Shown one piece after another: positions 18,463 to 46,411 of a DNA stretch of 64,000 nucleotides (position 1 is the first letter of the stretch; every line of letters begins with the position of its first letter). The stretch spans positions 558,001-622,000 of the forward strand of contig NIVC01000212.1 of NCBI GenBank assembly GCA_002269645.1, written 5' to 3'. Below the pieces are notes generated by a model that had not been told where the DNA came from, searched no databases, and worked only from the letters and a program-made list of their open reading frames with translations. Made by a program: the position numbers and the translations under genes. This DNA comes from Macrostomum lignano (taxonomy: Eukaryota).

Positions 18463-20317
18463 CTACGCTAAGTGTCTAACATGGAATGCGATATTGCTCT
18501 CAGACAGACTCTCAGAGCACTCTAAAACAATATCTACATCTACATGTACATATTGCTTAACGTCGACAGGTAGTGGCTTAAAAATTAAGGTTTTCTTATT
18601 TTTAGTAAAAGTCAGCAAAAAATAAATGTAGAGTTTTTTCGGGCAGCATTTCAGATTTTGTTCCGCGGTTGCCAATATATTTTTTATACATACACGTAAA
18701 TAAGATCTTTGATAAGAATTTTATTTACTTTGAAGTACGAAGCAGCAATAAAAATATTACACATGTACATGTCCGGTACATGTCCAAGAACTTACGTCCA
18801 ATCTTACCAGCTCCAACTCAAAAAATGTTCATTCTCGATCATAAGACAGACGAAAAACATATTACAGGAAGTGAGATCAATATACTTTGTCCCAATCGCA
18901 AAGAGAACTCACCGATACAGGAGTAGTTGACGAACAAGAACTTGAAGTTCATAACGCATGGATCACCAAAGACTTCATTCGTTGCCAACACGTCGCACGA
19001 CTCCTTCTGCTGGCAGGCTGCCCGAACCAGCTGAAGCGACCATGCGCTCCAGCAATCAGTGGCCGTGTCAGTTTCGAGGGTGCAGTGGGGTGCCGAGAAT
19101 TCTTCCGACTTTCCATACAAGGCGAAGTGAACATCGATGGTTGCTAGGAGACCCTGCGGCTGGCTACAGTTCAGTACAGCGACTTCTGACTCGCACACGA
19201 GCACAGAGTGAACGGATGGAGCTGAGAAAAATGGTGCATTTTAATGAATAGATTTATTTATTCAATAGTATGTCAATGCTAACCCTTCATTGTTTACCAA
19301 TCTCCTCTCTCCTCTCCTCTCTCCTCTACTCTGCTCTCCTCTCCTCTCTCCTCTACTCTCCTTTCCTCTCTCCTCTCCTCTCTCCTCTCCTCTCTCCTCT
19401 ACTCTCCTCTCCTCTCCTCTCCTCTCCTCTCTTCTCCTCTCTCCTCTATACTCTACTCTCCTCTCCTCTCTCCTCTCCTCTCTCCTCTACTCTCCTCTCC
19501 TCTCCTCTCCTCTCTCCTCTACTCTCCTCTCCTCCCCTCTCTCCTCTACTCTCCTCTCCTCCCCTCTCTCCTCTACTCTCCTCTCCTCCCCTCTCTCCTC
19601 TACTCTCCTCTCTTCTCCTCTCTCCTCTACTCCCCTCTCCTCTCCTCTCTCCTCTCCTCTCCTCTCTCCTATCCTCTCTCCTCTACTCTCCTCTCCTCTC
19701 CTCTCCTCTCCTCTCTTCTCCTCTCTCCTCTATACTCTACTCTCCTCTCCTCTCTCCTCTCCTCTCTCCTCTCCTCTCTCCTCTACTCTCCTCTCCTCTC
19801 CTCTCTCCTCTCCTCTCTCCTCTACTCTCCTCTCCTCCCCTCTCTCCTCTACTCCCCTCTCCTCTCCTCTCTCCTCTCCTCTCCTCTCTCCTCTCCTCTC
19901 TCCTCTCCTCTCTCCTCTCCTCTCTCCTCTACTATCTCTTCTCCTCTCCTCTCTCCTCTTCTCTCCTCTTTCCTCTCCTCACTCCTCTCCTCCTCTCCTC
20001 CTCCGCTTCTCTCCTCTTTCCTCTCCTCACTCCTCTCCTCCTCTCCTCCTCCGCTTCTCCCTCTCTTACTTCTGCTCTCTCCTATGTTTTCCCTGTCTCC
20101 CCCTCTCTATTCCTCTCATCTTCCTCTTCTCTTCACTCGGCCCTCATGTCTCTCATCTCTCATCTCGCATCTCTTTATTTAATCTCTCCTATCCCTACAG
20201 TCATGAAACACCACTTCAGTAGCAACTGCTGAACATACCGCTGCAGAACACCACAAAGTGGCTAACACAGATCGAACTCGTTAAAAGCACAATCGCAAAA
20301 TTTGAAGAAAATCTCAT
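18463..20317 (-). CDS. secreted SUEL/rhamnose-binding (Gal_Lectin) protein, ~148 aa
   Basis: Signal exon 20317-20239 (MRFSSNFAIVLLTSSICV..., donor G|GTATGT). Phase 1-1 SUEL exon 19221-18913 (CESE..C...ALYGK...C...C...CQQKESC...NEVFGDPC..KFLFVNYSC). The last exon, 18521-18463, is tentative. Confidence 0.75.
19300..20170. repeat. (CTCCT)n-type low-complexity tract in SUEL intron 1
   Basis: Directly visible. Confidence 0.9.
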
Positions 20318-20734
20318 TGTGAAATATTAAATCAGCGGGCTTCAATCTTGAAATGCGTATGAAAAAACCTGGGGATTTTAACATTTGGGGAAATTTTCCC
20401 AGTTGCTAAATACATATGTATGAGACATACGCGCCTATGAGAACAAATGAATGCGCACGTTTTGAAGCAATAGAAATTGAATTACAACGGCTGCTGAGAG
20501 TGAAAACGCTAAAATTGCTTCGATTTTGAGCAGCAAAGCATAAAAATTTTATGCGCTAAAAGAGTTGACATAATTCTGCCATTAATAGTGCCAAAAGCCC
20601 ATTGCGTTTGAAAACAATGAGCTGAAAGCATTTCGCTGTCACCTAGGAGTAACCAGAAAATTTTTCAAGTAAATCGCTTTCAGCGCCTTTTGTTTGAGCA
20701 ATGCACCATATCTCTCTACCCAACACTCCTCAGT

Positions 20735-21720
20735 CCGATTCCACACCTTTCCGATCCCACACCCCTCAATCCCGATCCCACACCCCTCAATCCCGATCCC
20801 ACACCCCTCAATCCCGATCCCACACTCCTCAATCCCGATCCCACACCCCTTAATCCCGACCCCACATATCCTTCAATCTCGATCCCATACCCCTCAATCT
20901 CGATCCCACACTCCTCAATCCCGATCCCACACTCCTCAATCCCGATCCCACACTCCTCAATCCCGATCCCACACCCCTCAATCCCGATCCCACACTCCTC
21001 AATCCCGACCCCACATATCCTTCAATCTCGATCCCACACCCCTCAATCCCGATCCCACACTCCTCAATCCCGATCCCACACTCCTCAATCCCGATCCCAC
21101 ACTCCTCAATCCCGATCCCACACTCCTCAATCCCGATCCCACACCCCTCAATCCCGATCCCACACCCCTCAATCCCGATCCCACACTCCTCAATCCTGAT
21201 CCCACACCCCTCAATCCCGATCCCACACCCCTCAATCCCGATCCCACACCCCTTAATCCCGACCCCACATATCCTTCAATCTCGATCCCATACCCCTCAA
21301 TCTCGATCCCACACCCCTCAATCCCGATCCCACACCCCTCAATCCCGATCCCACACTCCTCAATCCCGATCCCACACCCCTCAATCCCGATCCCACACTC
21401 CTCAATCCCGATCCCACACCCCTCAATCCCGATCCCACACCCCTCAATCCCGATCCCACACTCCTCAATCCCGATCCCACATATCCTTCAATCCCGATCT
21501 CACATATCTCTCTATCCCGATCCCACATATCCCTCAATCCCGATCCCACACCCCTCAATCCCGATCCCACACCCCTCAATCCCGATCCCACACTCCTCAA
21601 TCCCGATCCCACATATCCTTCAATCCCGATCTCACATATCTCTCTATCCCGATCCCACATATCCCTCAATCCCGATCCCACACCTCTCAATCCCGATCCC
21701 ACACCTCTCAATCCCGATCT
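20735..21720. repeat. 21-bp minisatellite (CCCTCAATCCCGATCCCACAC)
   Basis: Directly visible, with periodic variant units. Confidence 0.9.
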
Positions 21721-22129
21721 CAAATATTAGTGAATTTCAAACATTGAAAACTCGTAAAAATAGCTATTTTTTAATAGTCTGAGTACTCGAGTAGCCATGA
21801 CAACAATCAGTTTCAAATGACGCGATTCGTCACTTGCTGGTCAGTGGAAACTACATTCTCATCAGTGATCACGATGTGGTCGCTGAGTACGAAGAATTCG
21901 TTTCCTTTGCTTCCACCGCCGCTGCCGCCAGCGCTGTTGTCGGCGTAGATTTCGTCGTTTTCAATGCCAGCAAGCCCGCTAAGGACTCGACCTCGGCCTG
22001 GTGATGACATGGTTTAGAGAGCTTGCCGGGTATAAATTATCGCCTACTGAAAGTAGTTAAAAAATCTGAAGCGATTGTATTTCAGTGTTGCTGCGCACTC
22101 AGTTAAAAAATGTGGTGTGTCGTGTCCGG

Positions 22130-22945
22130 CGCCCCGTGTCTAATATGTCTGGCGCTCCGTGTCTAATATGTCTGGCCCCCCGTGTCTAGACGTGTGCCAC
22201 CCCGTGTCTAGACGTGTGCCACCCCGTGTCTAGACGTGTGCCACCCCGTGTCTAGACGTGTGCCACCCCGTGTCTAGACGTGTGCCACCCCGTGTCTAGA
22301 CGTTTGCCACCCCGTGTCTAGACGTGTGCCACCCCGTGTCTAGACGTGTGCCACCCCGTGTCTAGACGTTTGCCACCCCGTGTCTAGACGTTTGCCACCC
22401 CGTGTCTAGACGTTTGCCACCCCGTGTCTAGACGTTTGCCACCCCGTGTCTAGACGTGTGCCACCCCGCGTCTAGAGGTTTGCCACCCCGTGTCTAGACG
22501 TGTGCCACCCCGCGTCTAGAGGTTTGCCACCCCGTGTCTAGACGTTTGCCACCCCGTGTCTAGACGTTTGCCACCCCGTGTCTAGACGTTTGCCACCTTG
22601 TGTCTAGACGTTTGCCACCCCGTGTCTAGACGTTTGCCACCCCGTGTCTAGACGTTTGCCACCTTGTGTCTAGACGTTTGCCACCCCGTGTCTAGACGTT
22701 TGCCACCCCGTGTCTAGACGTGTGCCACCCCGTGTCTAGACGTGTGCCACCCCGTGTCTATACGTGTGCCACCCCGTGTCTAGACGTTTGCCACCCCGTG
22801 TCTAAACGTGTGCTACCCCGTGTCTAGACGTTTGCCACCCCGTGTCTAGACGTTTGCCACCTTGTGTCTAGACGTTTGCCACCCCGTGTCTAGACGTGTG
22901 CCACCCCGTGTCTAGACGTGTGCCACCCAGTGTCTAGACGTCTAG
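22130..22945. repeat. 22-bp minisatellite (CCCCGTGTCTAGACGTGTGCCA)
   Basis: Directly visible. Confidence 0.9.
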
Positions 22946-22998
22946 CGTATTTATCCCCCGTGCAGTATACGTACAACTTCTAGACTGTACTTTCTTTT

Positions 22999-24326
22999 TC
23001 AGTCTGGGCGCGACCTGCATTCGCTGATCTCTGGTGACCCAAGGCTGAACAGATTCAAACACGTACCGCCGATTCCGCTGCCGCTGCTGGCGTATGGAAA
23101 CACTTCGGCCGACTTTCTTAGAAACAGCCTAGGCAGCAGGTCCAAGTCCGGATCCGTAACCAGCGCCCCCAGCCAATCAACGAAGGCGTCCTGTACCGGG
23201 CAGCGGCCGGAGGACTCGCCCTCAAGCCAGGCTGAGTAGCGGGCCAGCGACTGCGGCAGGGCAAGGCGCACGTAGCCCACCAAGCGCAGGTCCCGTGCCT
23301 TGTCTCGAATCTTGGCTGCCAGTGGCCGGCAAACCGTGACGATGTCGCGCAGCGTAAAAGCGCCGGATTGGCTGCCGCTGCTGAATTTTGGCACCAATTT
23401 GAAATGGAGATAGTAGCCGGATACACGGCGTTTGAGTTTTGAGAAACAGTTCTTCGATTGTAGAGACATTTCTGGTCTGAGAAATGACCCGAGTTCCTTG
23501 TTAAGTAGCCTACAAACCGATAATTTGAAACTTTGAAAATCAAATCGATTCCAGTAGAGGCATAAAGTGATTTTAAGCTTGTTAGTCGGTGACAAAAAAA
23601 AACTTTAGTTTATGGTATAAACCCATGCCAGGAATAAGCCAAGAATTTAGGAGGACGAGAATTTGAGGGTATGGACTGGAGACTATAGATTGGAGAGTGC
23701 AGATTGGAGGGTGTAGATTGGAGGGTGTAGATTGGAGGGTGTAGACTGGAGGGTGTAGATTGGACGGTGTAGATTGGAGAGTGAAGACTAGAGTTTAGAT
23801 TGGAGGGTATACATTAGGGGGTGTAGATTGGAGGGTGTAGATTTGAAGGTGTAGATTTGAGGGTGTAGATTGGAGGGTGCAGATTGGAGGGTGCAGATTT
23901 GAGGGTGTAGATTGGAGGGTGCAGATTGGAGGGTGCAGATTGGAGGGTGTAGATTGGAGGGTGTAGATTGGACGGTGTAGATTGTAGGGTATAGGTTGGA
24001 GAGTGTAGATTAGAGGGTGTAGATTGGAGGGTGCAGATTGGAGGGTGTAGATTGGAGGGTGTAGATTGGACGGTGTAGATTGTAGGGTATAGGTTGGAGA
24101 GTGTAGATTAGAGGGTGTAGACTAGAGGGTGTAGATTGGAGGGTGTAGTCTAGAGGGTATAGACAGTAGGGGGTGGACTGGAGGGATAGCCACAGAATTA
24201 GTATATGCCCCACTGCGTGCGTGACAGAACTCTGCGTTCAGCCCATTCCAGCAACCATTGCTTGACACCCGAGCTCTGGGTGTGGCTCTCGAATTTCAGG
24301 ATGTAAAAAGACAATTTCCTCATCAT
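22999..24326 (-). CDS. uncharacterised protein (2 exons; 3' end uncertain)
   Basis: Exon 24326-24214 (MMRKLSFYILKFESH...LSRT, phase 2 donor) joins the acceptor TTTGTAG|G at 23509 and the long open frame to 22999. No family recognised. Confidence 0.5.
23690..24185. repeat. 14-bp minisatellite (GTGTAGATTGGAGG) in the intron of the orphan gene
   Basis: Directly visible. Confidence 0.9.
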
Positions 24327-24504
24327 CCCTGCTGGCCTTTTCTGCCTCCTCTCACACACTGATTAGGATGAATCACTGAAAAGGGGTGTGGCCCGCGACC
24401 TCATAAAACCCCACAACAGGGGTAATATAAGGGCAGGGAAAAGGTAGAAAAAGGTGCTTCAGTGAGTGCCTCTTTTTCCAACAAAACAGTCGGAATCGGA
24501 AGGT

Positions 24505-30104
<5,600 letters not shown>

Positions 30105-31196: not shown

Positions 31197-34100
31197 TCAG
31201 AGTTCGTCAACTTTTTCAACCGCAGTCGTCTCAGTGCTGCCGACGTATGAGTTCATCTCGGACTGCACTGTCCCATCAGATTTAAGAGCAAACAGTGCCC
31301 GGAAAATGTAGAGCAGTAGCTCCAGAAGTTCGCATAGGGTGAGTATTGAAACGCCACACCAGAGGCCCAGAATGCCTGCAATTGAAGTTAAAAAATCGCT
31401 GAGACTTAAATGCAAGACATTCTAACACGGTACTTTAATCTGAACATCATGTCGATTACGAGTACCTCCAAAGTCAGCCACTAAGTTCTTTGTGGGGTAG
31501 GCTTCCTCTTCAGAGATCTCCTGAATTTTGGCGCTCCACGCTTTGACTGTCAGCCAGGCGAGACGATTTTGAAGCGCCTCGAGTTCTATGTCAAAGTTGA
31601 GCCTATCACTAGCTGTTTTATTGTCTGACGAAGACTCGGAGTAGCTTTGCACTTTCAGCAATACCTGATAGATATTAGCGAGGCCTCTCATACCGCTGAT
31701 GCTGGTTCTATAGCCAAAGTTCGAGGCCAGCTGTTTGATTAGCTTAACTGATTGGGCATTTTTTAAATTGGGCCACGAATAAGTGACGAATCTGGTACTG
31801 TAGTCATCTGTGCGGCACGGCGGCTGGCACAGCTGGCTGCCTTCGAACTGGTAACGCTGTATCTGTGACACTTGTTCGTTGTAGCAGGTCTCAACAACTC
31901 GAGAGAAATTGCTAATGTCCTTGATGTCGAAACAGTTTTTGTACTTCGTGACTAAAGCCACTGGAATAGGTTGAAACGATGGTAAACACTTGCAGTAGTC
32001 GATAAACTTTTCTACAATGTAGGTGTTAATGCAGTCCTCTCGATCAGAGACAAACTGCCTCTCGGAACCTTTTAAATCACTAAAATGGCAAATTAAGTAC
32101 CTGTTCATCCTTTATTTCAAATAAAGACTCGAATGATATGCAAATTCACTTACATTGTCCCTGCCTTCAATTCAGTCATCTCACGTAGCTTTGTCAGCTT
32201 TTCAGCCCAGTCTGATGAGGCGATTACCGCCCTAGCTGCTCTCTCAATTCTGCAATTATAAAACTGTTTGATTAAAAGAAATCGAACACATAGATGCATA
32301 CGAGATAAACATATTTGAGACTAATTCAAACAGCTCACTTTCCGCCACTATTGGATGAAGCTACATCCCAGGAAGGCAGTCGGTAACTATCCAGTTTTTC
32401 GATCTTCTGACAAGGACTGGATTTAGTGGAGAGTCTTGAGTACTTCTCAAACCTAAGCTGCACGTCCATGCGTTGAGCAGCCGCTATCGCGATACTCCTG
32501 GACGCCCAGGGAAATTTCTTCTCCGGTACAATGATCGCCTGCGGTTTCAGAAACGGCAGAATGAACTCTTTGGCAAAAAGTTTTTAGTAGCATCGTTGAA
32601 AGAATTTCTTACATTTAGCGCCGTATTACTGTCATCGGAGGATGACATCACGCTGTCATGAACAACTTGGTTGAGTTTTTCCATGCCAAATGGAAGCCGA
32701 CCCTTGGAATCTGTCGAGTCGGTGAAGTACATGATTGACAGCTCACTATTCGCCAGCTGCGTACTTGTCATATTGGCGGTAAACTTTTTCTTGAGAAACT
32801 GGTGGCACATGCCAAGCTGGGGGTGCTCAAAATTCACAAAGTGTTCATTGGTGCACTTCTGGCCGGCGAAGCTGCAGCTGGCAAGTGCGATGCTGAGATC
32901 GCTGCCAAATTGACGAGCGAGCAGATGCCTGCCCACAGAGTCTCTGATGGCGCCTGGGACGCTGCGAAATTTAGAATCTGCGACAATGTTTTAAATTAAG
33001 TCTGAAATTAATTGTTTTAATCTGGGATTAATATAATATTAAACGTTCAAAACTCACAGCACAACGCTAAGTTACACGGCTCGAAGGCCATTTCGAAAAG
33101 AGTATGTTGAGAGATTTCTACGCGGTCGATGAAGCGAAGAGCGCGTTCCGGCAAGCAGGCGGGGATCTCAGACTCGAATGCTTTTTGACGCCTGAAATGA
33201 AATTGATTTTTCTCTCTTAGCCTTTTGTTGGAATTGTCAAACAGATAAGATTTAGGATCCTCTGCCTCACTCGAAGTGGCTGTAGTTTTCATTCGCTATG
33301 TCCATCACTATGCTCACTGAGCGGCAGTAGTTGTCCGTACTCGTCTTGGCTACGTCTGGCGTTTCAATTTCCATTTTCAGTAGCCTCCCAACTCCTTAAA
33401 TGCAACGTTTTTTGCAATCCATTTACCATATGCATCGGTTACTGTTTTAGTTAGGCCGTATGAATAAAATTAGCTTTTGTTCCCTAACCCTAATCTAGCA
33501 TGACAAAAGCAACGCCTATCGCGTTCCATTTTCCGACTTCAATGCTCCGATGTCTATGGCAAAAACGAACATGCTGTATAAATGTAAGTATAGAAAGGAA
33601 AAGACAGAAAATTCAACAAAAGAGAGGAGGGAAGACCTTGCAGATCTCGGATCAAACATGCTGTTGAACAGGAGTGTCGCGAACTCAACGCCAACTAGCT
33701 ACGTGGTATTCATTACATTGAGATGTCAGCACGAACGGAAGTGTAGACTAAGCAACTCGGAACAGGATAGTGTTCCATGCATTTGAGCGTATATACAAGG
33801 CAATGCTGACTGCGTTATTAATATTGAGCATTTGTGTTTGTTGTTGTGTGTAACTTTTGGTCCATTCGACGATGCGTGAATTACGAGTATCTATAAATAC
33901 ACTGACTTGTTGTAGATAGTTGTCTATGGTAAAAATACTAGCTTGTCGTAGACAGTTGTCTATGGTAAAAAGTCTGGCTTGTTGTAGACAGTTGTCTATG
34001 GTAAAAACACTAGCTTGTTGTAGACAGTTGACTATGGTAAAAAGTATGGCTAGTTGTAGACAGTTGTCTATGGTAAAAATTCTGGCTGGTTGTAGACATT

Positions 34101-37100
34101 TGTCTATGGTAAAAAGTCCGGCAGCAAAGGATTGAAGAGGGTGGAAATATACGAATCCAAACTTGCAATCGATTGTCAGAGTCTCAGTACGAGCGTAAAG
34201 ACAGAGAGCCAGCATAACTCAAGAAAGCGACTTTGCACGGATACAGTGACCTTCAGTCGATTGCACCAACACACCTGGGAATTATAGCAACAGAATTCGA
34301 TGCTCAGTCATCACTTATGACATAAATTCCTAAACTAGATCAGCACTTGCTCAGCAGTTGATCAATTCAGCTCAAAGTCTGATAAGTTTGAGAACTCAGA
34401 GAAGAAATCGATCCCTCTATTCATACGGCCTATTTCATTTTTACACTGAAAAAATCATTTTGCATCGCATTTCACACCGCGGCTTCTCATGCTCTGCTCT
34501 TGAATGCCGAACAGACGGCCCCAGGCAACGCAGTCCCTTCCAGGAAGCGTGTCGTTCTGCCAGCCGGTGTACATCGACATTCGCTGCCGTTCCGCCGACT
34601 CAGAGCTGGAGCTCACGATACAGTCGTAGCTTTTGGATATGGCTATAATTATAGAAACAGAAACGGGCTGCAAGGATTAGTACAGCAAACACTAGAGAAG
34701 GTAAAATATTTGCTAGAAATTGGCATCCGCCACGTTTACACACTGAAACTACTAGCCTGAGCACTCAACCGATTAAATTTCCTGCCAATCAGTTTCGCTC
34801 AGTTGGTCAATAAGCAAATGCAAGCCTAAGTTTATTTGATCAACACGATCGCTTTTAGTAACTATGGCAATGGCAACGGTAGCCCAGATATATGGCCAAT
34901 TTAGCAGGCGAAAAAAGAATCAAATTATTTATTACGACCGTATTTGATCGGTAAAAGCTACAAGTGGAAGCCAAATATTCCAAATTCATTACTCTAGGTG
35001 TTCTTATTTTTCCAGCTCTGGTGTTGCAGAGGAATTTTACGAGAATAGGAGGGACCGCAACCCTTTGGTGTTTTGGTTGGCGACCCTACCTGTCTCTTGG
35101 TTAGCGCCCCTGTCTCTTGGTGGGCGCCCCTGTCTCTTGGTGGGCGTCCCTGTCTCTTGGTTAGCGCCCCTGTCTCTTGGTGGGCGCCCCTATCTCTTTC
35201 TGGGCGCCACTGTCTCTTGGTGGGCGCCACTGTCTCTTGGTGGGCGCCCCTGTCTCTTGGTGGGCGCCCCTGTCTCTTGGTGGGCGTCCCTGTCTCTTGG
35301 TTAGCACCCCTGTCTCTTGGTGGGCGCCCCTATCTCTTTCTGGGCGCCACTGTCTCTTGGTGGGCGCCACTGTCTCTTGGTGGGCGCCCCTGTCTCTTGG
35401 TTAGGCGCCCCTGTCTGCCTCTTGGTGGGTGCCCCTGTCTCTTTGGTGGACACCCCTGTTTCTTGGTGGGCGCCCTTGTCTCTTGGTGGGCGCCCCTGTC
35501 TCTTGGTGGGCGCCACTGTCTCTTAGTGGTTGCCCCTGTCTCTTAGTGGATGCCCCTGTCTCTTGGTGGGCACCCCTGTCTCTTGGTGGGCGCCCCTGTC
35601 TCTTGGTGGGCGCCACTGTCTCTTAGTGGATGCCCCTGTCTCTTGGTGGGCCCCCTGTCTCTTGGTGGGCACCCCTGTCTCTTGGTGGGCGCCCCTGTCT
35701 CTTGGTGGGTGCCTCTGTCTCTTGGTTAGGCGCCCCTGTCTGCCTCTTGGTGGGCACCCCTGTCTCTTGGTGGGCGCCCCTGTCTCTTGGTGGGCGCCCC
35801 TGTCTCTTGGTTAGCGCCCCTGTCTCTTGGTGGGCACCCCTGTCTCTTGGTGGGCACCCCTGCCTCTTGGTGGGCGCCCCTGTCTCTTTGGTGGACACCC
35901 CTGTCTCTTGGTGGACACCCCTGTCTCTTGGTGGGCACCCCTGTCTCTTGGTGGGCACCCCTGTCTCTTAGTGGATGCCCCTGTCTCTTGGTTAGGCTCC
36001 CCTGTCTCTTAGTGGGCGCCCCTACCCCGGTGGATGCCCGTTCAAGTCTTGTCAAAAGTTGAGTTCCTGCCATTCCTCGGGTTTGTTTACCCCTTTCGTT
36101 TAGATTTTGGAGAAGCCCCATTGTTTCAGGGCGCGCCCCACCCTGGCCACCCTGCAAACGCCATTGATTTTTTCCTATATATTGAATGGGTCTACGATAA
36201 CTGCCTTCCATTCCTCCCCCTGAAATACGATACTTAGCAGTAAAATAAACCAAGAAATTTTATTAGTGCTCCATAAATTTCAGTCACGGTAAACGCCTGA
36301 AACCGTGCGTTCTAGAAGTCATAAAAAATCATACTGCACTATTTACACTGTTTATAGCTAGGTGTGGTAATTAATAGAGTACCCACGCTTACCATTTTTT
36401 CAGGAAATGTTCTGTAAAATATGTCTTTTAGAAGCTAGTCATTACTGTTATTATCTGGGATATCTGACCATGCGGTAACCTGTAAGCTCTGTGTGAAATC
36501 TGGGATTTCCGGCTTTTCCGGCTTTCGATAGGCAGATTTGCACTTCTCTATATTGAACTATTAATTCATGTCGACAAATATACAAAAAAAAAATTTGAAT
36601 ATACGAGAACAAAATTTATATGTTCAGGTGTTGATTTTAAGTGGAATCGTTCACTTGATTAACTTCACTACTTATGTTTGAAGGGTAGCGAATAATGATT
36701 CTCGATATCAGTATTTGCTAAATATCATCGCTGTAGCATTTCTGGCAGTCTAATTTGAACAGGTGCAACCTTATCTATTTAAGGCGTTCTCAAACTCACG
36801 ACAGTAAGGTATGTCGCACAATGCAGCATTCAGTCTGCCGCTCTCATCGTCCGTAAAAAAGCAATAAGGTCCGTCTGAAAATGCCGCTAAGTTGCTGAAG
36901 TTTCCGATGTGCATAGGCTGGCTGTCTGGAAACAAATCAAAGATTTGAGCGTGGGAAATTTCTTTATTAGATTAGTAAGTTACTGTGAAATTGGACTTGC
37001 CGACATCCCGGATCTGCAGGATGACGGCAATGCTACTGTCCGAACCGCAGGTCTGTAAGCGGCTGTTGGCGCACGGTGATGTACAGTTTGTTCGGCTGCT

Positions 37101-38742
37101 GTTGTCAACGCCGTCCAATCGTCCGCACAGGCAGTCGCCACTGGTCACGAGAGCCGCATAAGGGAAATTGTAGCCATCGCAGCACTCGGCGCAAGTCTCA
37201 TGCGCTTTGATGCCGTTCCTGTAGCAGGTGAAGTTGAATGCAGCCGCGGTCGCTGCATCAGTCACGGGGAAGCAGCCGATCTGTTGAAGCTTAGGACCTA
37301 AAGCGAGTAGTTTAGAAGGCAAAAGTTGTTTAGAAAACAGCCGGTTGGGATATTAGAAATATTCTTAACAGTAGGAATACCAAACCATTTCTTAGAAAGT
37401 AATTTAAAAATTACTTGCTGGCTAGCTAACTTTTTGTTGGCCAGCTTCTCTAACAAGAATCAAGTCGCCAGCCCTCCGGACCGTTGAGGCATTGAAAAGT
37501 TCAGCAAGAAGATCGGATTTTTCATCAATGCAGCCTTGGCAAGTCTCTAAATTTTATAAGAACGTCGACCAAATGTGTTTGTGTCAGATCTGACGTCGCA
37601 ATTCGCCGGATTTCACCCAGGCGGAGCTTTGGAGCTTCCCATTGCGAATTTCTCTGATGTCTCTGATCAAGCCTCGACACAAACCTGTACTGCTAGGTAT
37701 CCTCAACTAGTCTCTCAAGCATTCAGTCATCATCCAGACGCCATCAGCACCTTCAACCGGGGGCGGATTCCCCCTATGATAGTTCTACTGTTAATTACGA
37801 GGTTTAAGCTAAGAGGTTTTGTTGAATTACTCACGAGTTGCTATGGGTAGAAACATCGACAGAGGCAAACCAGGAGGAGAGCGGCATCGAGTCTCATTGT
37901 CCGAGAAGTGAAGGGACAGCAGGCTCGCAGCCAGGCTGGCCTCGCCTCTGCTCTGCAGCATCCGAGCTGCATCGTTCCATCTCATACACGGTCTCCTAGT
38001 GATGTAGGGCTTAAAACTCGGGACAGCTGTGTAGTTGAAGTACCTTGTGTCGTTGAAGTCCAGCCGAACTGTTGAGTACCCGTAGACCACAGCCGAGCTG
38101 ACGTTGCCTGTGTAATCATTGCCAGTGAGACTGGTTCGGCAATCCAAATCTTGGCCTACGGTTTTCAATGGAATTTTTCTAAAAGTTAGTCGTACTGACA
38201 TTAATGAATGTTTATTATAAGCAACTTTTATTAATTATGTTAAACTTGCCGTTAAGAGGCACCTGTAACGACTTCAACAGCGATTCCTCGGTGCTTCGAA
38301 TAACATCTAGAAATGCTTTGGTCGGCTCGTTCAGTACAGAATCAGTTTTTTTGGATAGATCAAAGCTGTAGAATTCGATTTTTTCGCTTGTGTTCTTCTT
38401 AGTAAGATGCTCCATGTTCTCAATATTGAAGGTTGTCAACTTTTCTACCATGCGACTGGCCGTGATGGCCCGGGCGGGACAGATGTACACATCCGGGAAC
38501 TGGAACTTCAACGAGGACATGCTCATGCTGGTCATCACTGGGGCCTGAAGGAACCTTTCAAACAAAGTGGACAGGTGATAGGCAAACCCACTGTAGGTGC
38601 CTAGCAGGAATAAGACCCAGATGAGCCTGCCAACTTGGCTGGACTGCTCAGAGAATCTGCCAAGTCCGTGAGCAGTTGTGTAGCCACAGAAACTGCTCAC
38701 TGGTGCGCTCAGCTTCCGTGATGCGGAGCTGTAGCTACTCAT
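31197..38742 (-). CDS. DEG/ENaC (amiloride-sensitive channel family) subunit with kringle and WSC domains in the ectodomain, ~1031 aa
   Basis: 12 phase-compatible exons: 38742-38250, 38155-37835, 37297-37001, 36925-36800, 34642-34478, 33394-33271, 33191-33076, 32977-32613, 32538-32339, 32249-32154, 32079-31466 and 31375-31197 (3096 nt in total). Motifs: TTAHG (HG motif), TM1, FPDVYIC, SCSFAGQKC..F.HPQLGMCHQF, a Cys-rich thumb, and VADFGGILGLWCGVS (TM2, GxS filter). Introns 1 and 3 require GC donors. Confidence 0.8.
33076..34642 (-). CDS. channel exons 5-7: second, degenerate kringle
   Basis: YDC...MYTGWQNDTLPGRDCVAW | ...TPDVAKTSTDNYCRS... | ...EIPAC. Confidence 0.6.
33900..34115. repeat. 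36-bp minisatellite in channel intron 5
   Basis: GTTGTAGACAGTTGTCTATGGTAAAAA... about 6 copies. Confidence 0.85.
35085..36020. repeat. ~21-bp minisatellite (CCTGTCTCTTGGTGGGCGCCC) in channel intron 4
   Basis: Same family as the array at 9605-10050. Confidence 0.9.
36800..36925 (-). CDS. channel exon 4: kringle 1, C-terminal half (Cys4-6)
   Basis: DGPYCFFTDDESGRLNAALCDIPYC matches GPWCYT...CDIP.C; TTTCCAG acceptor and GTGAGT donor; phase 1-1. Too short for the ORF track. Confidence 0.8.
37001..37297 (-). CDS. channel exon 3: WSC domain
   Basis: IGCF...TCAECC...YAAL..SGDCLCG...NCTSPC...QTCGS; phase 1-1 exon of 297 nt. Confidence 0.85.
37835..38155 (-). CDS. channel exon 2: kringle 1, N-terminal half (Cys1-3)
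   Basis: DCRTSLTGNDYTGNVS...PCMRW...FSDNETRCRSP matches the kringle pattern C..G.DY.G...C..W...CR.P; phase 1-1 exon. Confidence 0.75.
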
Positions 38743-42255: not shown

Positions 42256-43082
42256 TCTATGAATACTTCGTATTACTTTGAAATAATCCGTGTGGACATT
42301 TTAACACACTGCAATGAAAAATCATTGTTCTTATGGCTTGGGAGATGCAAACACACTGTATGATTTCCACGTGAGTGAGGCATTCAATTGAAGCCTGCAA
42401 CAATGGACTGAAAAGGCAGTGAGTACATACTCGTACTCGTACGAGCGTACATGGGCTTCAATAAGCCTCGTAAATATTTTTCCAACTCTCTATTGTTGTT
42501 GCTGCTGCCACTAGAATGGAAAAAAAATTGATCAACACAGAAGCTACGGCACCATTGGAAAGATGTGCCGGTCATGTGAGCCGCTTTGAAAGAGCAGGAG
42601 AGTATAATCAAAGAAAAACATTGGTTGAAAAGCGCGGTTTTGTCGGAAGGGTAAAAACAATGGGACGTGTATAGTTTCTGAGCGCTCAGTTGGGCTCAAC
42701 TAGGTCCCAGAAGAGGACGCTGGGAAAAAGGCGGCTGGCTGAGGTCTGGGATGTGGAAACTCCCAGATGGAGAGAGTTTGGAGAAATTGGAGACGGGCAG
42801 AGCAATGGGCTGAGAATAAAATATGGAAATACAGGGAGAATTGATGGCTAATGCTGGCTTTGGCAAACGGACGAACAATGAGAAAGTGGTGGGGATTTAT
42901 GATAGGTTCAGAGAAATAAAAAGGTGAATAGCCACATCACAAAGACGTTCCTATTGGTCCTGATCTAAGAAGCATAAGAGAATCCACACAGCTCTAACGG
43001 TATAAATTATTACTACCTTTTTTATTAGTGACCAGGTGTTGCAAATGTTAGAGTTCCAAGAATAATTCAATTGCTGATAACA

Positions 43083-43413
43083 ATGACTCTAATTACCCGG
43101 CTTCTTTTTCTTAGCTGCTCGCTGTCTGTCTCCATGGCAGCCCTGGCAATTGTATGCGAAAATGATACAATGACGGCCGACTGCGCAACCCAGGTGATTT
43201 CCGTTTCCATAGCAACATTCGGCAAGTCGAGCATGTTCTCCGCCTCGTGTCCGAACCAGTCGCCGACTGAGTGCAACAGCGGCACCGCCTACGGTCTGAT
43301 CAGCGACGCATGCGAGGGCCAGAACAGCTGCTCGATGGCCGCGAGTAAAGCGCTGTTTGGCGATCCGTGTCCCGGATACGAGAGCTACATGGTGCTGTAC
43401 TACAGCTGTACAG
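43083..43413 (+). CDS. secreted SUEL/rhamnose-binding lectin, first exon
   Basis: Signal-like MTLITRLLFLSCSLSVSMA, then CEND...C...ATFGK...C...C...CEGQNSC...LFGDPCPGYESYMVLYYSC; donor AG|GTAAGG. Downstream exon not resolved. Confidence 0.8.
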
Positions 43414-43496
43414 GTAAGGCATTAAGGTTGTAACGGTACAAATGATGGATTTTCAAACGGGTGCCATTTTTTGTTCGGTCCTTTTTTATGGTTATG

Positions 43497-45181: not shown

Positions 45182-46411
45182 ATGGAGGGCACAATGTTTT
45201 TCACACTTCGTCAGGCCAATTGCACGCCGGAGTTTCGTCGGGCAGCCTACAATCCCTCGGACACTGTCCGGGTGACCATCTACAGCTTGACAGTGTTGCA
45301 GGCCGCCATTCTGCCTGTTGGGGCTGCCCTCAACATTGCCTGTTTTGCTACCCTGCTGCGCTATCCACTTGGCGCTGAGGTGAACGGACACTTTGTGAGT
45401 TTCAGCGTCTGCGATACAGCGTTTCTCCTGTTTAATCTGCTCGACACCATCAGCCATTGTGTCGAGAACTCAACACCGTTGACTGACGGTCCGGAACCCT
45501 TCAACTACATTGCCTATGTCCATCCGATTGCGTGGACACTGCGCAGTGTGGTGTACACTGCTCACAGTTGGCAGACGGTGCTGCTCAGCGGCCTCAAATG
45601 GCTACGCATCTGCCGGCCGCTGTCGGCCCTGCCAGAGTCCAGAATTCGCCACCTCATCGGGCTTGTATGGCTGTACAGTCTGGTCACCAGCATTCCACCG
45701 ATTCTGCTGTTCCAAGCATTTGTCACGGTTCTGTATGCCAACTGCCATGACCAGGGCTTTCGGGTCGCCGGCAGCGGTTATCACCGACTCTACAGCATTG
45801 ACAACAGTGGAGACGTCGGTGGCGGCATCATACCGCCCGCCATTCCACCGTCATTTGTCGCCGTGAACGCGTCCTTGCTGCCGGCGCTTATCTGCCTGAT
45901 CTGCAGTCTGGGCATCGTGTGGCGCCTGCGACACCCAGTCCTGCATCATCTACGGCGTCGCCGGCATCTCCGTCGGCAAGAAAACCACTTCCTGGATCCT
46001 GGCGCAGCTCGGCTAGGCCGCGAGGCCACTCGCGCAGTGCTCATGTCGGCTAACAGTTTCCTGCTCTTCCAAATCCCGATGGTTATCTGGACACTGGTGG
46101 ACACCTGGTACTGGAAGCTGCTGCAGCCGGCGGTCTTCTCTATGCTCGTTGTAGTCAGCAACACAATCAGCCAAGCATTCTTTGCGGTGGACCTGTCGGT
46201 GTGTCTTCACAGCAATCACCAGTTTTCTAGCAACCTTCGAAGATACCTGCAGCCGTTTTGCAAGTGCAGAAAGCACTTCAAGCAGCAAAAACAGCAGCAG
46301 AAGCAGTGCAACAAGCAGTTTGAGCTTCGACGACTTCGAGGCTTTTCGGACTGCAATGGCGTGGAAGAGCAGGCCGGGACCTTCTCTATCTGCAGCTCAA
46401 CTCTGATCTGA
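45182..46411 (+). CDS. intronless divergent rhodopsin-class 7TM receptor (peptide-receptor-like), 409 aa
   Basis: Seven hydrophobic segments; TM1 LN, TM2 SVCD, ICL2 ICRPL, TM4 W..S..P, TM6 FLLFQIP; CKC near the C-terminal tail. Confidence 0.75.
   Translation: MEGTMFFTLRQANCTPEFRRAAYNPSDTVRVTIYSLTVLQAAILPVGAALNIACFATLLRYPLGAEVNGHFVSFSVCDTAFLLFNLLDTISHCVENSTPLTDGPEPFNYIAYVHPIAWTLRSVVYTAHSWQTVLLSGLKWLRICRPLSALPESRIRHLIGLVWLYSLVTSIPPILLFQAFVTVLYANCHDQGFRVAGSGYHRLYSIDNSGDVGGGIIPPAIPPSFVAVNASLLPALICLICSLGIVWRLRHPVLHHLRRRRHLRRQENHFLDPGAARLGREATRAVLMSANSFLLFQIPMVIWTLVDTWYWKLLQPAVFSMLVVVSNTISQAFFAVDLSVCLHSNHQFSSNLRRYLQPFCKCRKHFKQQKQQQKQCNKQFELRRLRGFSDCNGVEEQAGTFSICSSTLI

What the first reader, a model, noticed from the sequence alone, without database searches (positions are those of the whole stretch)
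36800..38155. WSC domain nested inside a kringle by exon insertion
Kringle Cys1-3 lie in exon 38155-37835 and Cys4-6 (GPYC...CDIPYC) in exon 36925-36800. A complete WSC domain lies between them on a symmetrical phase 1-1 exon. Kringle disulfides (1-6, 2-4, 3-5) would have to close around the inserted domain. This differs from the tandem Kringle-WSC order in Kremen and looks like an exon-shuffling event. Because the exon is symmetrical, it could also be skipped to give a WSC-less isoform.
Basis: partly seen in the sequence, partly recalled or inferred. Interest (0 to 1): 0.72.

Follow-up and report, generated by a model that had tools for sequence, protein, structure and literature searches.

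The report
WSC domain nested in channel kringle
A flatworm (Macrostomum lignano) sodium-channel gene of the DEG/ENaC family carries, in its outer loop, a very divergent kringle module split in two by a complete WSC domain on its own exon; this nested layout is conserved in several paralogues but has not been described.

Summary
On the minus strand, exons 38155-37835, 37297-37001 and 36925-36800 are open, all phase 1-1, and join into 247 aa. The middle exon is a complete WSC domain (Pfam E=1.5e-7). The outer exons carry three Cys each, with kringle signatures.

Pfam does not call the kringle. A profile of the two joined halves matches canonical kringles across the insertion point (hhalign 94.9%, P=4e-8; best of 200 shuffles 20.1 against 45.9). 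Each half matches the complementary part of the kringle. AlphaFold2 plus Foldseek recovered only the WSC fold, so closure of the kringle around WSC is inferred, not shown.

These exons are exons 2-4 of an intact 12-exon, 1037-aa DEG/ENaC channel gene (38742-31197) of Macrostomum lignano, contig NIVC01000212.1. A second kringle-like module follows. Three paralogues (34-43% identity) with transcriptome-derived GenBank models have the same exons, intron positions and phases. The nesting is therefore old, and it is spliced into mRNA in the paralogues.

This locus itself is not annotated over these exons. WSC-exon skipping is untested. Verdict: a new variant of known kinds, of moderate interest.

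The parts
38250..38742 (-). Exon A of the channel gene. It holds the start codon, the cytoplasmic N-terminus with FCGYTTAHGLGRF (HG motif), TM1, the post-TM1 FPDVYIC motif and the start of the extracellular loop. It ends in phase 1 at a GC donor (G|GCAAGT). An alternative GT donor lies after 38226.
   Evidence: ORF and model. tblastn of paralogues. The paralogue junctions lie 5-6 aa before Cys1 and fit the GC donor. Pfam ASC. FaNaC1 alignment to residues 15-120.
37835..38155 (-). K1N: N-terminal half of kringle-like module 1 (Cys1, Cys2, Cys3; C-x5-G-x2-Y-x-G, C-x2-W and C-R-x-P signatures). It has an insertion of about 30 aa between the Y-x-G strand and Cys2. Phase 1-1, 321 nt.
   Evidence: hhalign of K1N against kringle positions 17-55, P=8e-5. 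HMM pieces 5-16 and 20-53.
37001..37297 (-). Complete WSC domain on one symmetrical phase 1-1 exon (297 nt, 10 Cys), with a GC-AG donor (G|GCAAGT).
   Evidence: Pfam PF01822, 32.0 bits, E=1.5e-7, profile positions 2-81 of 82. The junction residues match paralogues. The paralogue model matches the WSC folds of Wsc1 and Kremen1.
36800..36925 (-). K1C: C-terminal half of kringle-like module 1 (GPYCFF = Cys4; LC-DIPYC = Cys5 and Cys6). Phase 1-1, 126 nt.
   Evidence: hhalign of K1C against kringle positions 57-78, P=2e-6. The PDB profile search puts a plasminogen kringle first. HMM piece 57-78.
34478..34642 (-). K2N: first exon of kringle-like module 2 (YDC..., YTGWQNDTLPGRDCVAW = Cys1 and Cys2). 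Phase 1-1.
   Evidence: Sub-threshold Pfam Kringle hits at this position in paralogues. 47 of 49 PDB profile hits are kringles. hhalign 95.6%.
33271..33394 (-). K2M: middle exon of module 2 (IETPD...DNYCRS = Cys3). Phase 1-2.
   Evidence: The junction is confirmed by database model P0146.
33058..33191 (-). K2C: last exon of module 2 (IPAC = Cys4; FEPCNLALC = Cys5 and Cys6). Phase 2-1.
31197..32977 (-). Remaining channel exons: B 32977-32613, C 32538-32339, D 32249-32154, E 32079-31466, F 31375-31197. They hold the conserved Cys-rich extracellular core, the pre-TM2 region, TM2 with GLWCGVS (G-x-S filter position) and the stop codon.
   Evidence: Pfam ASC E=5e-40. FaNaC, ENaC and ASIC chains in the PDB.
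35089..36023 (.). 20-bp minisatellite (46 copies) inside the intron between K1C and K2N. It is not coding. It may explain why the locus is missing from the GenBank annotation, which dropped transcripts overlapping repeat annotations.
   Evidence: Annotation filtering rule in PMC5730564. The link to the missing annotation is inference.

Best explanation
The three exons are internal coding exons of a DEG/ENaC-family cation-channel subunit gene of Macrostomum lignano (12 exons, 1037 aa, window 38742-31197, minus strand). About 390 residues are grafted into the variable N-terminal part of the extracellular loop, between the post-TM1 FPxVxxC motif and the first conserved Cys-rich core. The graft is a highly divergent kringle (module 1) with a complete WSC domain in its Cys3-Cys4 loop, followed by a second divergent kringle (module 2). 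All three kringle disulfides (1-6, 2-4, 3-5) join an N-half Cys to a C-half Cys, and each half has exactly three Cys. The two halves must therefore pair across the WSC domain, which has an even number of Cys (10) and is self-contained. The WSC domain most likely entered as a phase 1-1 exon into a phase-1 intron of the kringle, before this channel subfamily diversified. Functionally, the kringle/WSC/kringle block most likely acts as a ligand-, glycan- or matrix-binding head on the channel's extracellular loop that modulates gating. Shown: the exons, phases, WSC identity, profile-level kringle homology of both halves, channel identity, and conservation and mRNA inclusion in paralogues. Inferred: disulfide closure around WSC, the exon-shuffling origin, and the binding and gating role.
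For: Exon anatomy, and a fully phase-consistent 12-exon model with no stop codons. The exhaustive protein search finds M. lignano proteins collinear over residues 4-247 of the query (E down to 1.7e-67, 38-52% identity), and they also carry ASC channel domains. The paralogous genes of P0127, P0135 and P0004 have the same K1N, WSC and K1C exons in phase 1-1, and P0127 and P0135 share every later intron position too. Their GenBank models derive from RNA-seq and transcriptome assemblies (PMC5730564). WSC: Pfam E=1.5e-7, and Foldseek matches Wsc1 (TM 0.72) and Kremen1. Kringle: six Cys plus R4, G9, Y12, G14, W57, R89, P91, GPYCF and P139 are invariant. hhalign against 13 Pfam-verified kringles gives 94.9%, P=4e-8, spanning the insertion point. 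Each half matches the complementary part. Column shuffles reach at most 20.1 and Cys-fixed shuffles at most 19.4, against 45.9 observed. A filter-free kringle HMM gives 16.6 bits in three collinear pieces, against at most 8.5 bits in 2000 shuffles. Module 1 resembles module 2 (E=5e-5), and module 2 hits almost only kringles in the PDB. Channel: ASC E=5e-40, with FaNaC, ENaC and ASIC as the nearest solved structures.
Against: Pfam PF00051 gives no hit on module 1, even at E<=10. The AlphaFold2 model of the closest usable paralogue has pLDDT below 50 over the first 47 residues (Cys1 region). It predicts two confident helices between Cys2 and Cys3, and Foldseek finds no kringle match. The module 2 model matches nothing significant. 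Spacings are far from canonical: Cys1-Cys2 is about 50 residues against about 21, and the Cys3-Cys4 loop would still be about 32 residues (canonical about 11) with WSC removed. This locus has no gene call over these exons in the GenBank-derived index. The only database model of it, P0146, starts downstream in module 2, so transcription of these particular exons is not shown. Some older database models (P0005, P0143) lack the K1C half.
Confidence: 0.75

Rival explanations
1. The flanks are not a kringle. They are a lineage-specific cysteine-rich finger region of this channel subfamily whose short motifs (C-x2-W, C-R-x-P, G-P-Y-C, C-x-I-P-x-C) only mimic kringle signatures, so the WSC sits between two unrelated Cys-rich segments.
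For: No Pfam Kringle hit. The best PDB profile hit has only E=0.083 and covers the C-half only. The AlphaFold2 model shows helices where kringles have loops, and Foldseek gives no kringle hit. There are large length deviations.
Against: Profile-profile match of 94.9% with five of six Cys in register across the junction. The halves match complementary, non-overlapping kringle segments. The score is 13 sd above the shuffles, even with the Cys columns fixed. HMM scores exceed all 2000 shuffles for all six paralogues. The 3+3 Cys parity fits the kringle pairing exactly. The adjacent module 2 hits kringles in 47 of 49 PDB matches.
Confidence: 0.13
2. At this locus the exons are relics or a mis-joined model. 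The window copy is an unexpressed or decaying duplicate in a partly polyploid genome, or the K1/WSC exons are not included in its mRNA.
For: No gene is called over the region in the GenBank-derived index. The database model P0146 begins at an ATG in exon K2M. The assembly is highly redundant (PMC5730564). Two of the eleven donors are GC.
Against: Twelve exons and 1037 codons carry no stop or frameshift, all phases match, and every conserved Cys is kept. The GC donors are the only in-phase sites, and they give junctions that match paralogues residue for residue. The GenBank pipeline discarded transcripts overlapping repeat annotations, and the gene has minisatellites in two introns.
Confidence: 0.08
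3. The WSC exon is a cassette. Skipping it (37835>36925) keeps the frame and yields an isoform with an uninterrupted kringle, so the nested form is only one of two products.
For: The exon is symmetrical (1-1), and the skip junction reads ...LPIAT-H-SQPMH... in frame (derived). Its donor is a weak GC site. General knowledge associates GC donors with alternative splicing (not tested here).
Against: No database protein of the family lacks the WSC segment while keeping both kringle halves. The three transcript-derived paralogue models all include it.
Confidence: 0.12

Closest known systems
Kremen1/2 ectodomain (Kringle-WSC-CUB; PDB 5FWS, 5FWU)
   Same: It combines a kringle and a WSC domain in one extracellular polypeptide. 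The WSC of the paralogue model superposes on Kremen1 (Foldseek E about 2e-5). In the Kremen1 structure paper the kringle and WSC pack tightly (PMC5014086, listed).
   Different: Kremen has the domains in tandem, each complete. Here the WSC lies inside the kringle's Cys3-Cys4 loop. There is no CUB domain. The carrier is a two-TM ion channel, not a single-pass receptor.
Canonical kringles (plasminogen, tPA, prothrombin, HGF, ROR1/2; Pfam PF00051)
   Same: Six Cys with the flanking signatures C..G..Y.G, C..W, CR.P, GP[WY]C[FY] and C.[IV]P.C. Profile-profile probability is 95%.
   Different: Scores are below the Pfam threshold. There is an insertion of about 30 aa before Cys2 and a predicted helical Cys2-Cys3 segment. 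WSC plus about 30 extra residues sit between Cys3 and Cys4. The acidic D-x-D of the lysine-binding pocket (CRNPDxD) is replaced by CRSPPGLPL.
DEG/ENaC channels with lineage-specific extracellular inserts (FaNaC, ENaC, ASIC and nematode degenerins as carriers)
   Same: Two TMs, an HG motif, a G-x-S filter position, ASC Pfam E=5e-40, and FaNaC as the nearest solved structure. From general knowledge, the variable region after TM1 is where family-specific additions sit, for example the protease-sensitive inhibitory tracts of ENaC and the extra extracellular domains of MEC-4/DEG-1 (not tested here).
   Different: The insert here is built from recognisable mobile extracellular modules (kringle, WSC, kringle). 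I found no paper describing this for the family.
Tmed-krg1 of the polyclad flatworm Theama mediterranea (PMC9229212)
   Same: A flatworm membrane protein with a large extracellular region flanked by intracellular regions and carrying kringle domains. An M. lignano homologue is reported in anchor cells.
   Different: It is reported with six canonical kringles, and the paper mentions neither WSC nor a channel domain. No sequence was available to compare, so any relation is an untested lead.

Membership tests
Kringle (Pfam PF00051) | Six conserved Cys at the kringle positions with their signature neighbours | tested here: met
   C3, R4, G9, Y12, G14, C54, W57, C88, R89, P91, G118-P-Y-C-F122, C136, P139 and C141 are invariant in six paralogues. 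They are in register with kringle Cys2-6 in hhalign, and Cys1 is within 1-2 residues.
Kringle (Pfam PF00051) | Score above the curated Pfam gathering threshold (34.3 bits) | tested here: not met
   No hit at E<=10 for the native or WSC-deleted module 1. Module 2 of paralogues reaches only 8.8-22.1 bits.
Kringle (Pfam PF00051) | Profile-level homology of both halves to one kringle, collinear and complementary | tested here: met
   hhalign 94.9%, P=4e-8. K1N matches positions 17-55 and K1C matches 57-78. The shuffle maxima are 20.1 and 19.4 against 45.9 observed. The HMM gives three collinear pieces and 16.6 bits, against at most 8.5 bits in 2000 shuffles.
Kringle (Pfam PF00051) | Triple-loop fold with 1-6, 2-4, 3-5 disulfides | tested here: inconclusive
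   The AlphaFold2 model of paralogue P0001 has mean pLDDT 68.8, with the Cys1 region below 50. Foldseek returns only WSC and Kremen matches.
Kringle (Pfam PF00051) | Compact size (about 80 aa) and canonical loop lengths | tested here: not met
   141 aa even without WSC. Cys1-Cys2 is about 50 residues. Cys3-Cys4 is about 32 residues without WSC and about 140 with it.
WSC (Pfam PF01822) | HMM match over the whole domain above the gathering threshold | tested here: met
   The exon alone scores 32.0 bits against 27.8, over profile positions 2-81 of 82. Within longer queries the score is 25.3-29.3 bits, which is borderline.
WSC (Pfam PF01822) | WSC (PAN/apple-like) fold | tested here: met
   Tested on paralogue P0001, whose WSC exon is 40% identical to the window's. 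Foldseek matches 7pz2 Wsc1 (E=6e-6, target TM 0.72, rmsd 2.4 A) and Kremen1 5fwu/5fws (E about 2e-5).
DEG/ENaC (Pfam PF00858 ASC) | ASC profile match, two TM segments, HG motif, G-x-S in TM2 | tested here: met
   ASC E=5e-40 in three stretches split by the insert. TTAHGLGRF and GLWCGVS can be read in the model. FaNaC1 E=7.6e-16.
Kremen-type KR-WSC-CUB receptors | Tandem order kringle, WSC, CUB, with a single-pass TM | tested here: not met
   The WSC lies inside the kringle, there is no CUB hit, and the carrier is a two-TM channel.

The most novel reading that the evidence does not exclude
A Macrostomum-specific clade of DEG/ENaC channels has turned its extracellular finger into a matrix- or glycan-binding head built from a kringle that folds around a WSC domain. 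This would be the first nested-domain kringle. It would also be a channel physically tethered to extracellular material, a candidate mechanosensor or adhesion sensor, possibly linked to the kringle membrane proteins of flatworm anchor cells.
Probability: 0.15. Interest if true: 0.8.

Novelty: new variant of a known kind. Interest (0 to 1): 0.55.

Why it matters
Kringles are textbook autonomous, compact exon-shuffling modules. A kringle that tolerates a whole 100-residue domain in its Cys3-Cys4 loop, with all three disulfides bridging the insert, would be a clear natural case of domain nesting by exon insertion. It would also test how far the fold can be stretched. In addition, DEG/ENaC channels are not known to carry mobile extracellular modules. 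A kringle/WSC head on the gating-relevant outer region suggests a way to couple binding of matrix or glycans to channel opening, and this can be tested in a transgenic and RNAi-tractable flatworm. For annotation, the family is labelled only 'WSC domain-containing' or 'amiloride-sensitive sodium channel' in databases. Several models are truncated, and this locus is unannotated over the exons.

Tried and rejected
(1) A word-indexed protein search with the 247-aa translation found nothing. The exhaustive search was needed. A second word-indexed search with an alignment returned only 8 proteins and missed the NCBI paralogues.

(2) An exact look-up of the exon A ORF found no record.

I used paralogue P0001 as the target, with the window exons as alignment rows. 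A WSC-deleted construct could not be submitted for the same reason.

(4) Foldseek on both models gave no kringle. I do not read this as refutation, because the alignments had only 11 paralogous rows, the Cys1 region had low confidence, and a 100-residue insert breaks sequential structural alignment.

(5) The CAG|GTGCCT site at 38263 was rejected as the exon A donor, because it is phase 0 and no in-phase acceptor exists. The GT site after 38226 is in phase but adds 8 residues that are absent from all paralogues. The GC donor after 38250 is preferred.

(6) Exact exon mapping of P0004 stalled after residue 485, probably at a very short exon or a non-canonical site. The first seven exons were enough.

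(7) Literature searches for kringle or WSC in DEG/ENaC channels, and for nested kringles, found nothing relevant.

(8) The Tmed-krg1 lead could not be tested for lack of sequence.


Full report
**Source and setting**

The window is eukaryotic. A single-exon ORF at 45182-46411 is recorded exactly once, on contig NIVC01000212.1 of GCA_002269645.1. All relatives found later are Macrostomum lignano proteins. NIVC01 is the Mlig_3_7 assembly of that flatworm (PMC5730564).

**Checking the observation**

I read the minus strand and translated it.
- 38155-37835: 321 nt, AG acceptor, GTGAGT donor.
- 37297-37001: 297 nt, AG acceptor, GCAAGT donor.
- 36925-36800: 126 nt, AG acceptor, GTGAGT donor.

All three are multiples of three and are read in phase 1-1. 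Together they give an open 247-aa frame.

The only correction is that the WSC exon ends at a GC donor. No GT donor is in phase. The GC junction gives ...QIRDV-D-SQPMHIGNF..., which matches paralogues residue for residue.

Pfam finds a complete WSC domain in the middle exon (32.0 bits, E=1.5e-7, profile positions 2-81 of 82). It finds no kringle in the native or the WSC-deleted sequence, even at E<=10.

**What gene this is**

Just upstream on the same strand, ORF 38742-38215 begins MSS...FCGYTTAHGLGRF, followed by a hydrophobic segment and FPDVYIC. ORFs at 32936-31197 carry C-x-F-x-G-x-x-C, YSWP and GLWCGVSILTLCE. These are hallmarks of DEG/ENaC channels.

Using paralogues as guides (tblastn), I built a 12-exon model:
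- A 38742-38250
- K1N 38155-37835
- WSC 37297-37001
- K1C 36925-36800
- K2N 34642-34478
- K2M 33394-33271
- K2C 33191-33058
- B 32977-32613
- C 32538-32339
- D 32249-32154
- E 32079-31466
- F 31375-31197

Every junction is phase-consistent. There are ten GT-AG and two GC-AG introns. The product is 1037 aa with no internal stop.

Pfam ASC matches at E=5e-40 in three stretches split by the insert. The nearest solved structures are FMRFamide-gated channels, followed by ENaC, ASIC5, PPK26 and ASIC1.

A database model, P0146 (UniProt A0A1I8HKR9, 'Degenerin unc-8', 531 aa), is 100% identical to the model from exon K2M onward. It confirms the K2M>K2C, K2C>B and B>C junctions, but it starts at an internal ATG and skips exon D. 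No gene is listed over the K1/WSC exons in the GenBank-derived index.

**Relatives**

The word-indexed search found nothing. The exhaustive search of 1.84 billion representatives found proteins collinear over query residues 4-247:
- P0001: E=1.7e-67, 52% identity
- P0002: E=2.5e-52
- P0004: E=4.7e-36, 38% identity
- P0007: E=8e-27

The other hits are ordinary WSC proteins. All the collinear ones are M. lignano proteins, and they carry ASC plus WSC.

The full alignment shows the same order in every full-length member: TM1, kringle-like N-half, WSC, kringle-like C-half, a second kringle-like module, the channel core, then TM2.

**Intron positions in paralogues**

I fetched the loci of P0004, P0127 and P0135 and mapped the proteins exactly onto the DNA.

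| Paralogue | K1N exon (nt) | WSC exon (nt) | K1C exon (nt) | Phase |
|---|---|---|---|---|
| P0127 | 297 | 276 | 123 | all 1-1 |
| P0135 | 297 | 312 | 123 | all 1-1 |
| P0004 | 303 | 300 | 123 | all 1-1 |

P0127 and P0135 also share all later intron positions and phases with the window model. These paralogues are 34-43% identical to the window protein, so the nested arrangement predates the diversification of the family.

The GenBank CDS of NIVC01 derive from a genome-guided transcriptome (StringTie/TACO on RNA-seq, a mapped de novo assembly and TransDecoder). The K1N>WSC>K1C joins are therefore present in paralogue mRNAs. The same pipeline removed transcripts overlapping repeat annotations. 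The window gene has a 20-bp x 46 minisatellite and a 36-bp array in two introns. This may explain its absence from the annotation (inference).

**Is module 1 a kringle?**

*Sequence signatures.* In six paralogues, Cys1-6 and R4, G9, Y12, G14, W57, R89, P91, G-P-Y-C-F and P139 are invariant. These correspond to the kringle motifs C..G..Y.G, C..W, CR.P, GPWC[YF] and C.IP.C.

*PDB profile searches.* A profile of the joined halves puts a plasminogen kringle first (E=0.083, C-half only) and a neurotrypsin kringle third. Module 2 hits kringles in 47 of 49 matches, the best being tPA K2 at E=0.0086. Module 1 aligns to module 2 with Cys2-6 in register (E=5e-5).

I verified that all 13 are recognised by PF00051 at E<0.001 (best E=6.9e-33).
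- Module 1 against this set: 94.9%, P=4e-8, columns 42-133 onto kringle positions 17-78, so the alignment crosses the WSC insertion point.
- Module 2 against this set: 95.6%, P=1.2e-8.
- K1N alone aligns to kringle positions 17-55 (P=8e-5).
- K1C alone aligns to positions 57-78 (P=2e-6). The two segments are complementary and do not overlap.

*Controls.*
- 200 column shuffles: mean score 11.3, maximum 20.1, against 45.9 observed.
- 100 shuffles with the Cys columns fixed: maximum 19.4. The signal is therefore not Cys spacing alone.
- A kringle HMM run without filters gives the window's joined halves 16.6 bits, in three collinear pieces (HMM 5-16, 20-53, 57-78).
- The same HMM gives the native sequence 13.5 bits, with the same pieces flanking WSC.
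- All six joined paralogues exceed the maximum of 2000 shuffled sequences, 8.5 bits.

*Parity argument.* In a kringle, every disulfide (1-6, 2-4, 3-5) links the first three Cys to the last three. K1N and K1C have exactly three Cys each, and WSC has ten. The halves can only satisfy their cysteines by pairing with each other across WSC (inference and established kringle chemistry). By the same logic, older models that lack K1C (P0005, P0143) more likely missed a 123-nt exon than represent real proteins.

**Structure tests**

I therefore modelled the closest complete paralogue segment (P0001 residues 113-353, 50% identical) with 11 alignment rows, including the window exons.
- Mean pLDDT was 68.8, and below 50 for residues 1-47.
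- pLDDT was 75-91 through the Cys2-Cys3 region and WSC, and 64-72 in K1C.
- The model has two helices between Cys2 and Cys3, and a beta-hairpin at GPYCF...KLNAA.
- Foldseek against the PDB returned yeast Wsc1 (E=6e-6, target TM 0.72) and Kremen1 (E about 2e-5), and no isolated kringle.

A model of module 2 (P0142; pLDDT 76.4) matched nothing significant.

So the WSC fold is confirmed, but the kringle fold is not confirmed. I score this test as inconclusive. It does show that the module departs from a textbook kringle.

**Mechanism**

*Evolutionary.* All module exons are class 1-1, the intron phases flanking WSC are 1, and the WSC exon is a complete domain. The simplest history is insertion of a 1-1 WSC exon into a phase-1 intron in the Cys3-Cys4 loop of a kringle already resident in the channel. 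This happened before the paralogues split (inference). No un-nested ancestor or donor gene was found.

*Functional.* The insert lies after the post-TM1 motif and before the conserved Cys-rich core. From general knowledge of ASIC and ENaC structures, this is the variable outer ('finger') region that influences gating. I did not map this region here. Kringles bind proteins or lysine-like ligands, and WSC domains are putative carbohydrate binders. The acidic D-x-D of lysine-binding kringles is absent (CRSPPGLPL in place of CRNPDxD). I therefore favour a glycan-, matrix- or protein-binding head that modulates or tethers the channel, at roughly 40% confidence for that functional step.

A possibly related observation comes from the polyclad Theama mediterranea. 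There, a membrane protein with extracellular kringles (Tmed-krg1) is anchor-cell specific and needed for adhesion, and an M. lignano homologue is reported (PMC9229212). No sequence comparison was possible.

**Alternative splicing**

Skipping the WSC exon keeps the frame, and its GC donor is weak. However, no database protein shows a WSC-less form with both halves, and no read data were available. This remains untested.

**Novelty**

I found no publication on a domain nested in a kringle, or on kringle/WSC modules in DEG/ENaC channels. Databases label the family 'WSC domain-containing protein' or 'amiloride-sensitive sodium channel'. One fragment is named 'Kringle domain-containing'; Pfam gives it only a sub-threshold Kringle hit, and I did not map which module it covers.

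Each component is a known family. The arrangement and the carrier are new, and as far as the searched databases go they are confined to M. lignano. I rate it a new variant of a known kind, with interest 0.55.

Noticed in passing
window 34478-34642, 33271-33394, 33058-33191 (minus strand): A second, also very divergent, kringle-like module lies directly after the first and is encoded by three exons. It has its own expansions: about 30 aa between Cys2 and Cys3, about 27 aa between Cys3 and Cys4, and up to 26 aa between Cys4 and Cys5. This is the module that gets sub-threshold Pfam Kringle hits in paralogues.
   Followed up: yes
window 38248-38249 and 36999-37000 (minus strand donors): Two of the gene's eleven introns use GC-AG with the same CG|GCAAGT donor (after exon A and after the WSC exon). 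The paralogues use GT at the corresponding WSC-exon donor.
   Followed up: partly
window 35089-36023 and 33894-34115: Intronic minisatellites inside the channel gene: a 20-bp unit x 46 copies (86% matches) and a 36-bp unit x 6. They create long spurious ORFs on both strands (APTKRQGRPPRDRGAHQETG-type repeats).
   Followed up: partly
window 19301-28102: A run of at least seven different minisatellite arrays (periods 5-25 bp, 18-150 copies each, some 94-97% identical between copies). They account for the extreme GC-skew blocks at 18-22 kb.
   Followed up: partly
window 43071-43433 (+): An ORF with a complete SUEL-type galactose/rhamnose-binding lectin domain (Pfam E=1.5e-15), probably an exon of a larger gene.
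   Followed up: partly
window 45182-46411 (+): A single-exon 409-aa rhodopsin-like/Srw-like GPCR ORF (weak 7tm_1 hit, E=3.7e-5). It is the only gene of this stretch on record in the GenBank-derived index.
   Followed up: partly
window 29739-30104 (+): An ORF matching the C-terminal end of RPE65/carotenoid oxygenase (Pfam E=6.7e-15, profile positions 395-465 of 469), presumably the last exon of a neighbouring gene.
   Followed up: no
L003 3962-4237 (paralogue P0127): In this paralogue the exon at the WSC position (276 nt, phase 1-1) no longer reaches any Pfam WSC hit at E<=1-5, although both kringle halves are kept. The nested domain may be decaying in one branch of the family.
   Followed up: partly
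proteins P0005, P0143, P0142, P0003 (ML2-assembly models): Database models of paralogues disagree. Two lack the K1C half, one has a shortened K1C, and one has a retained-intron-like insertion before WSC. They look like prediction errors rather than isoforms, because loss of K1C would leave three unpaired Cys.
   Followed up: partly
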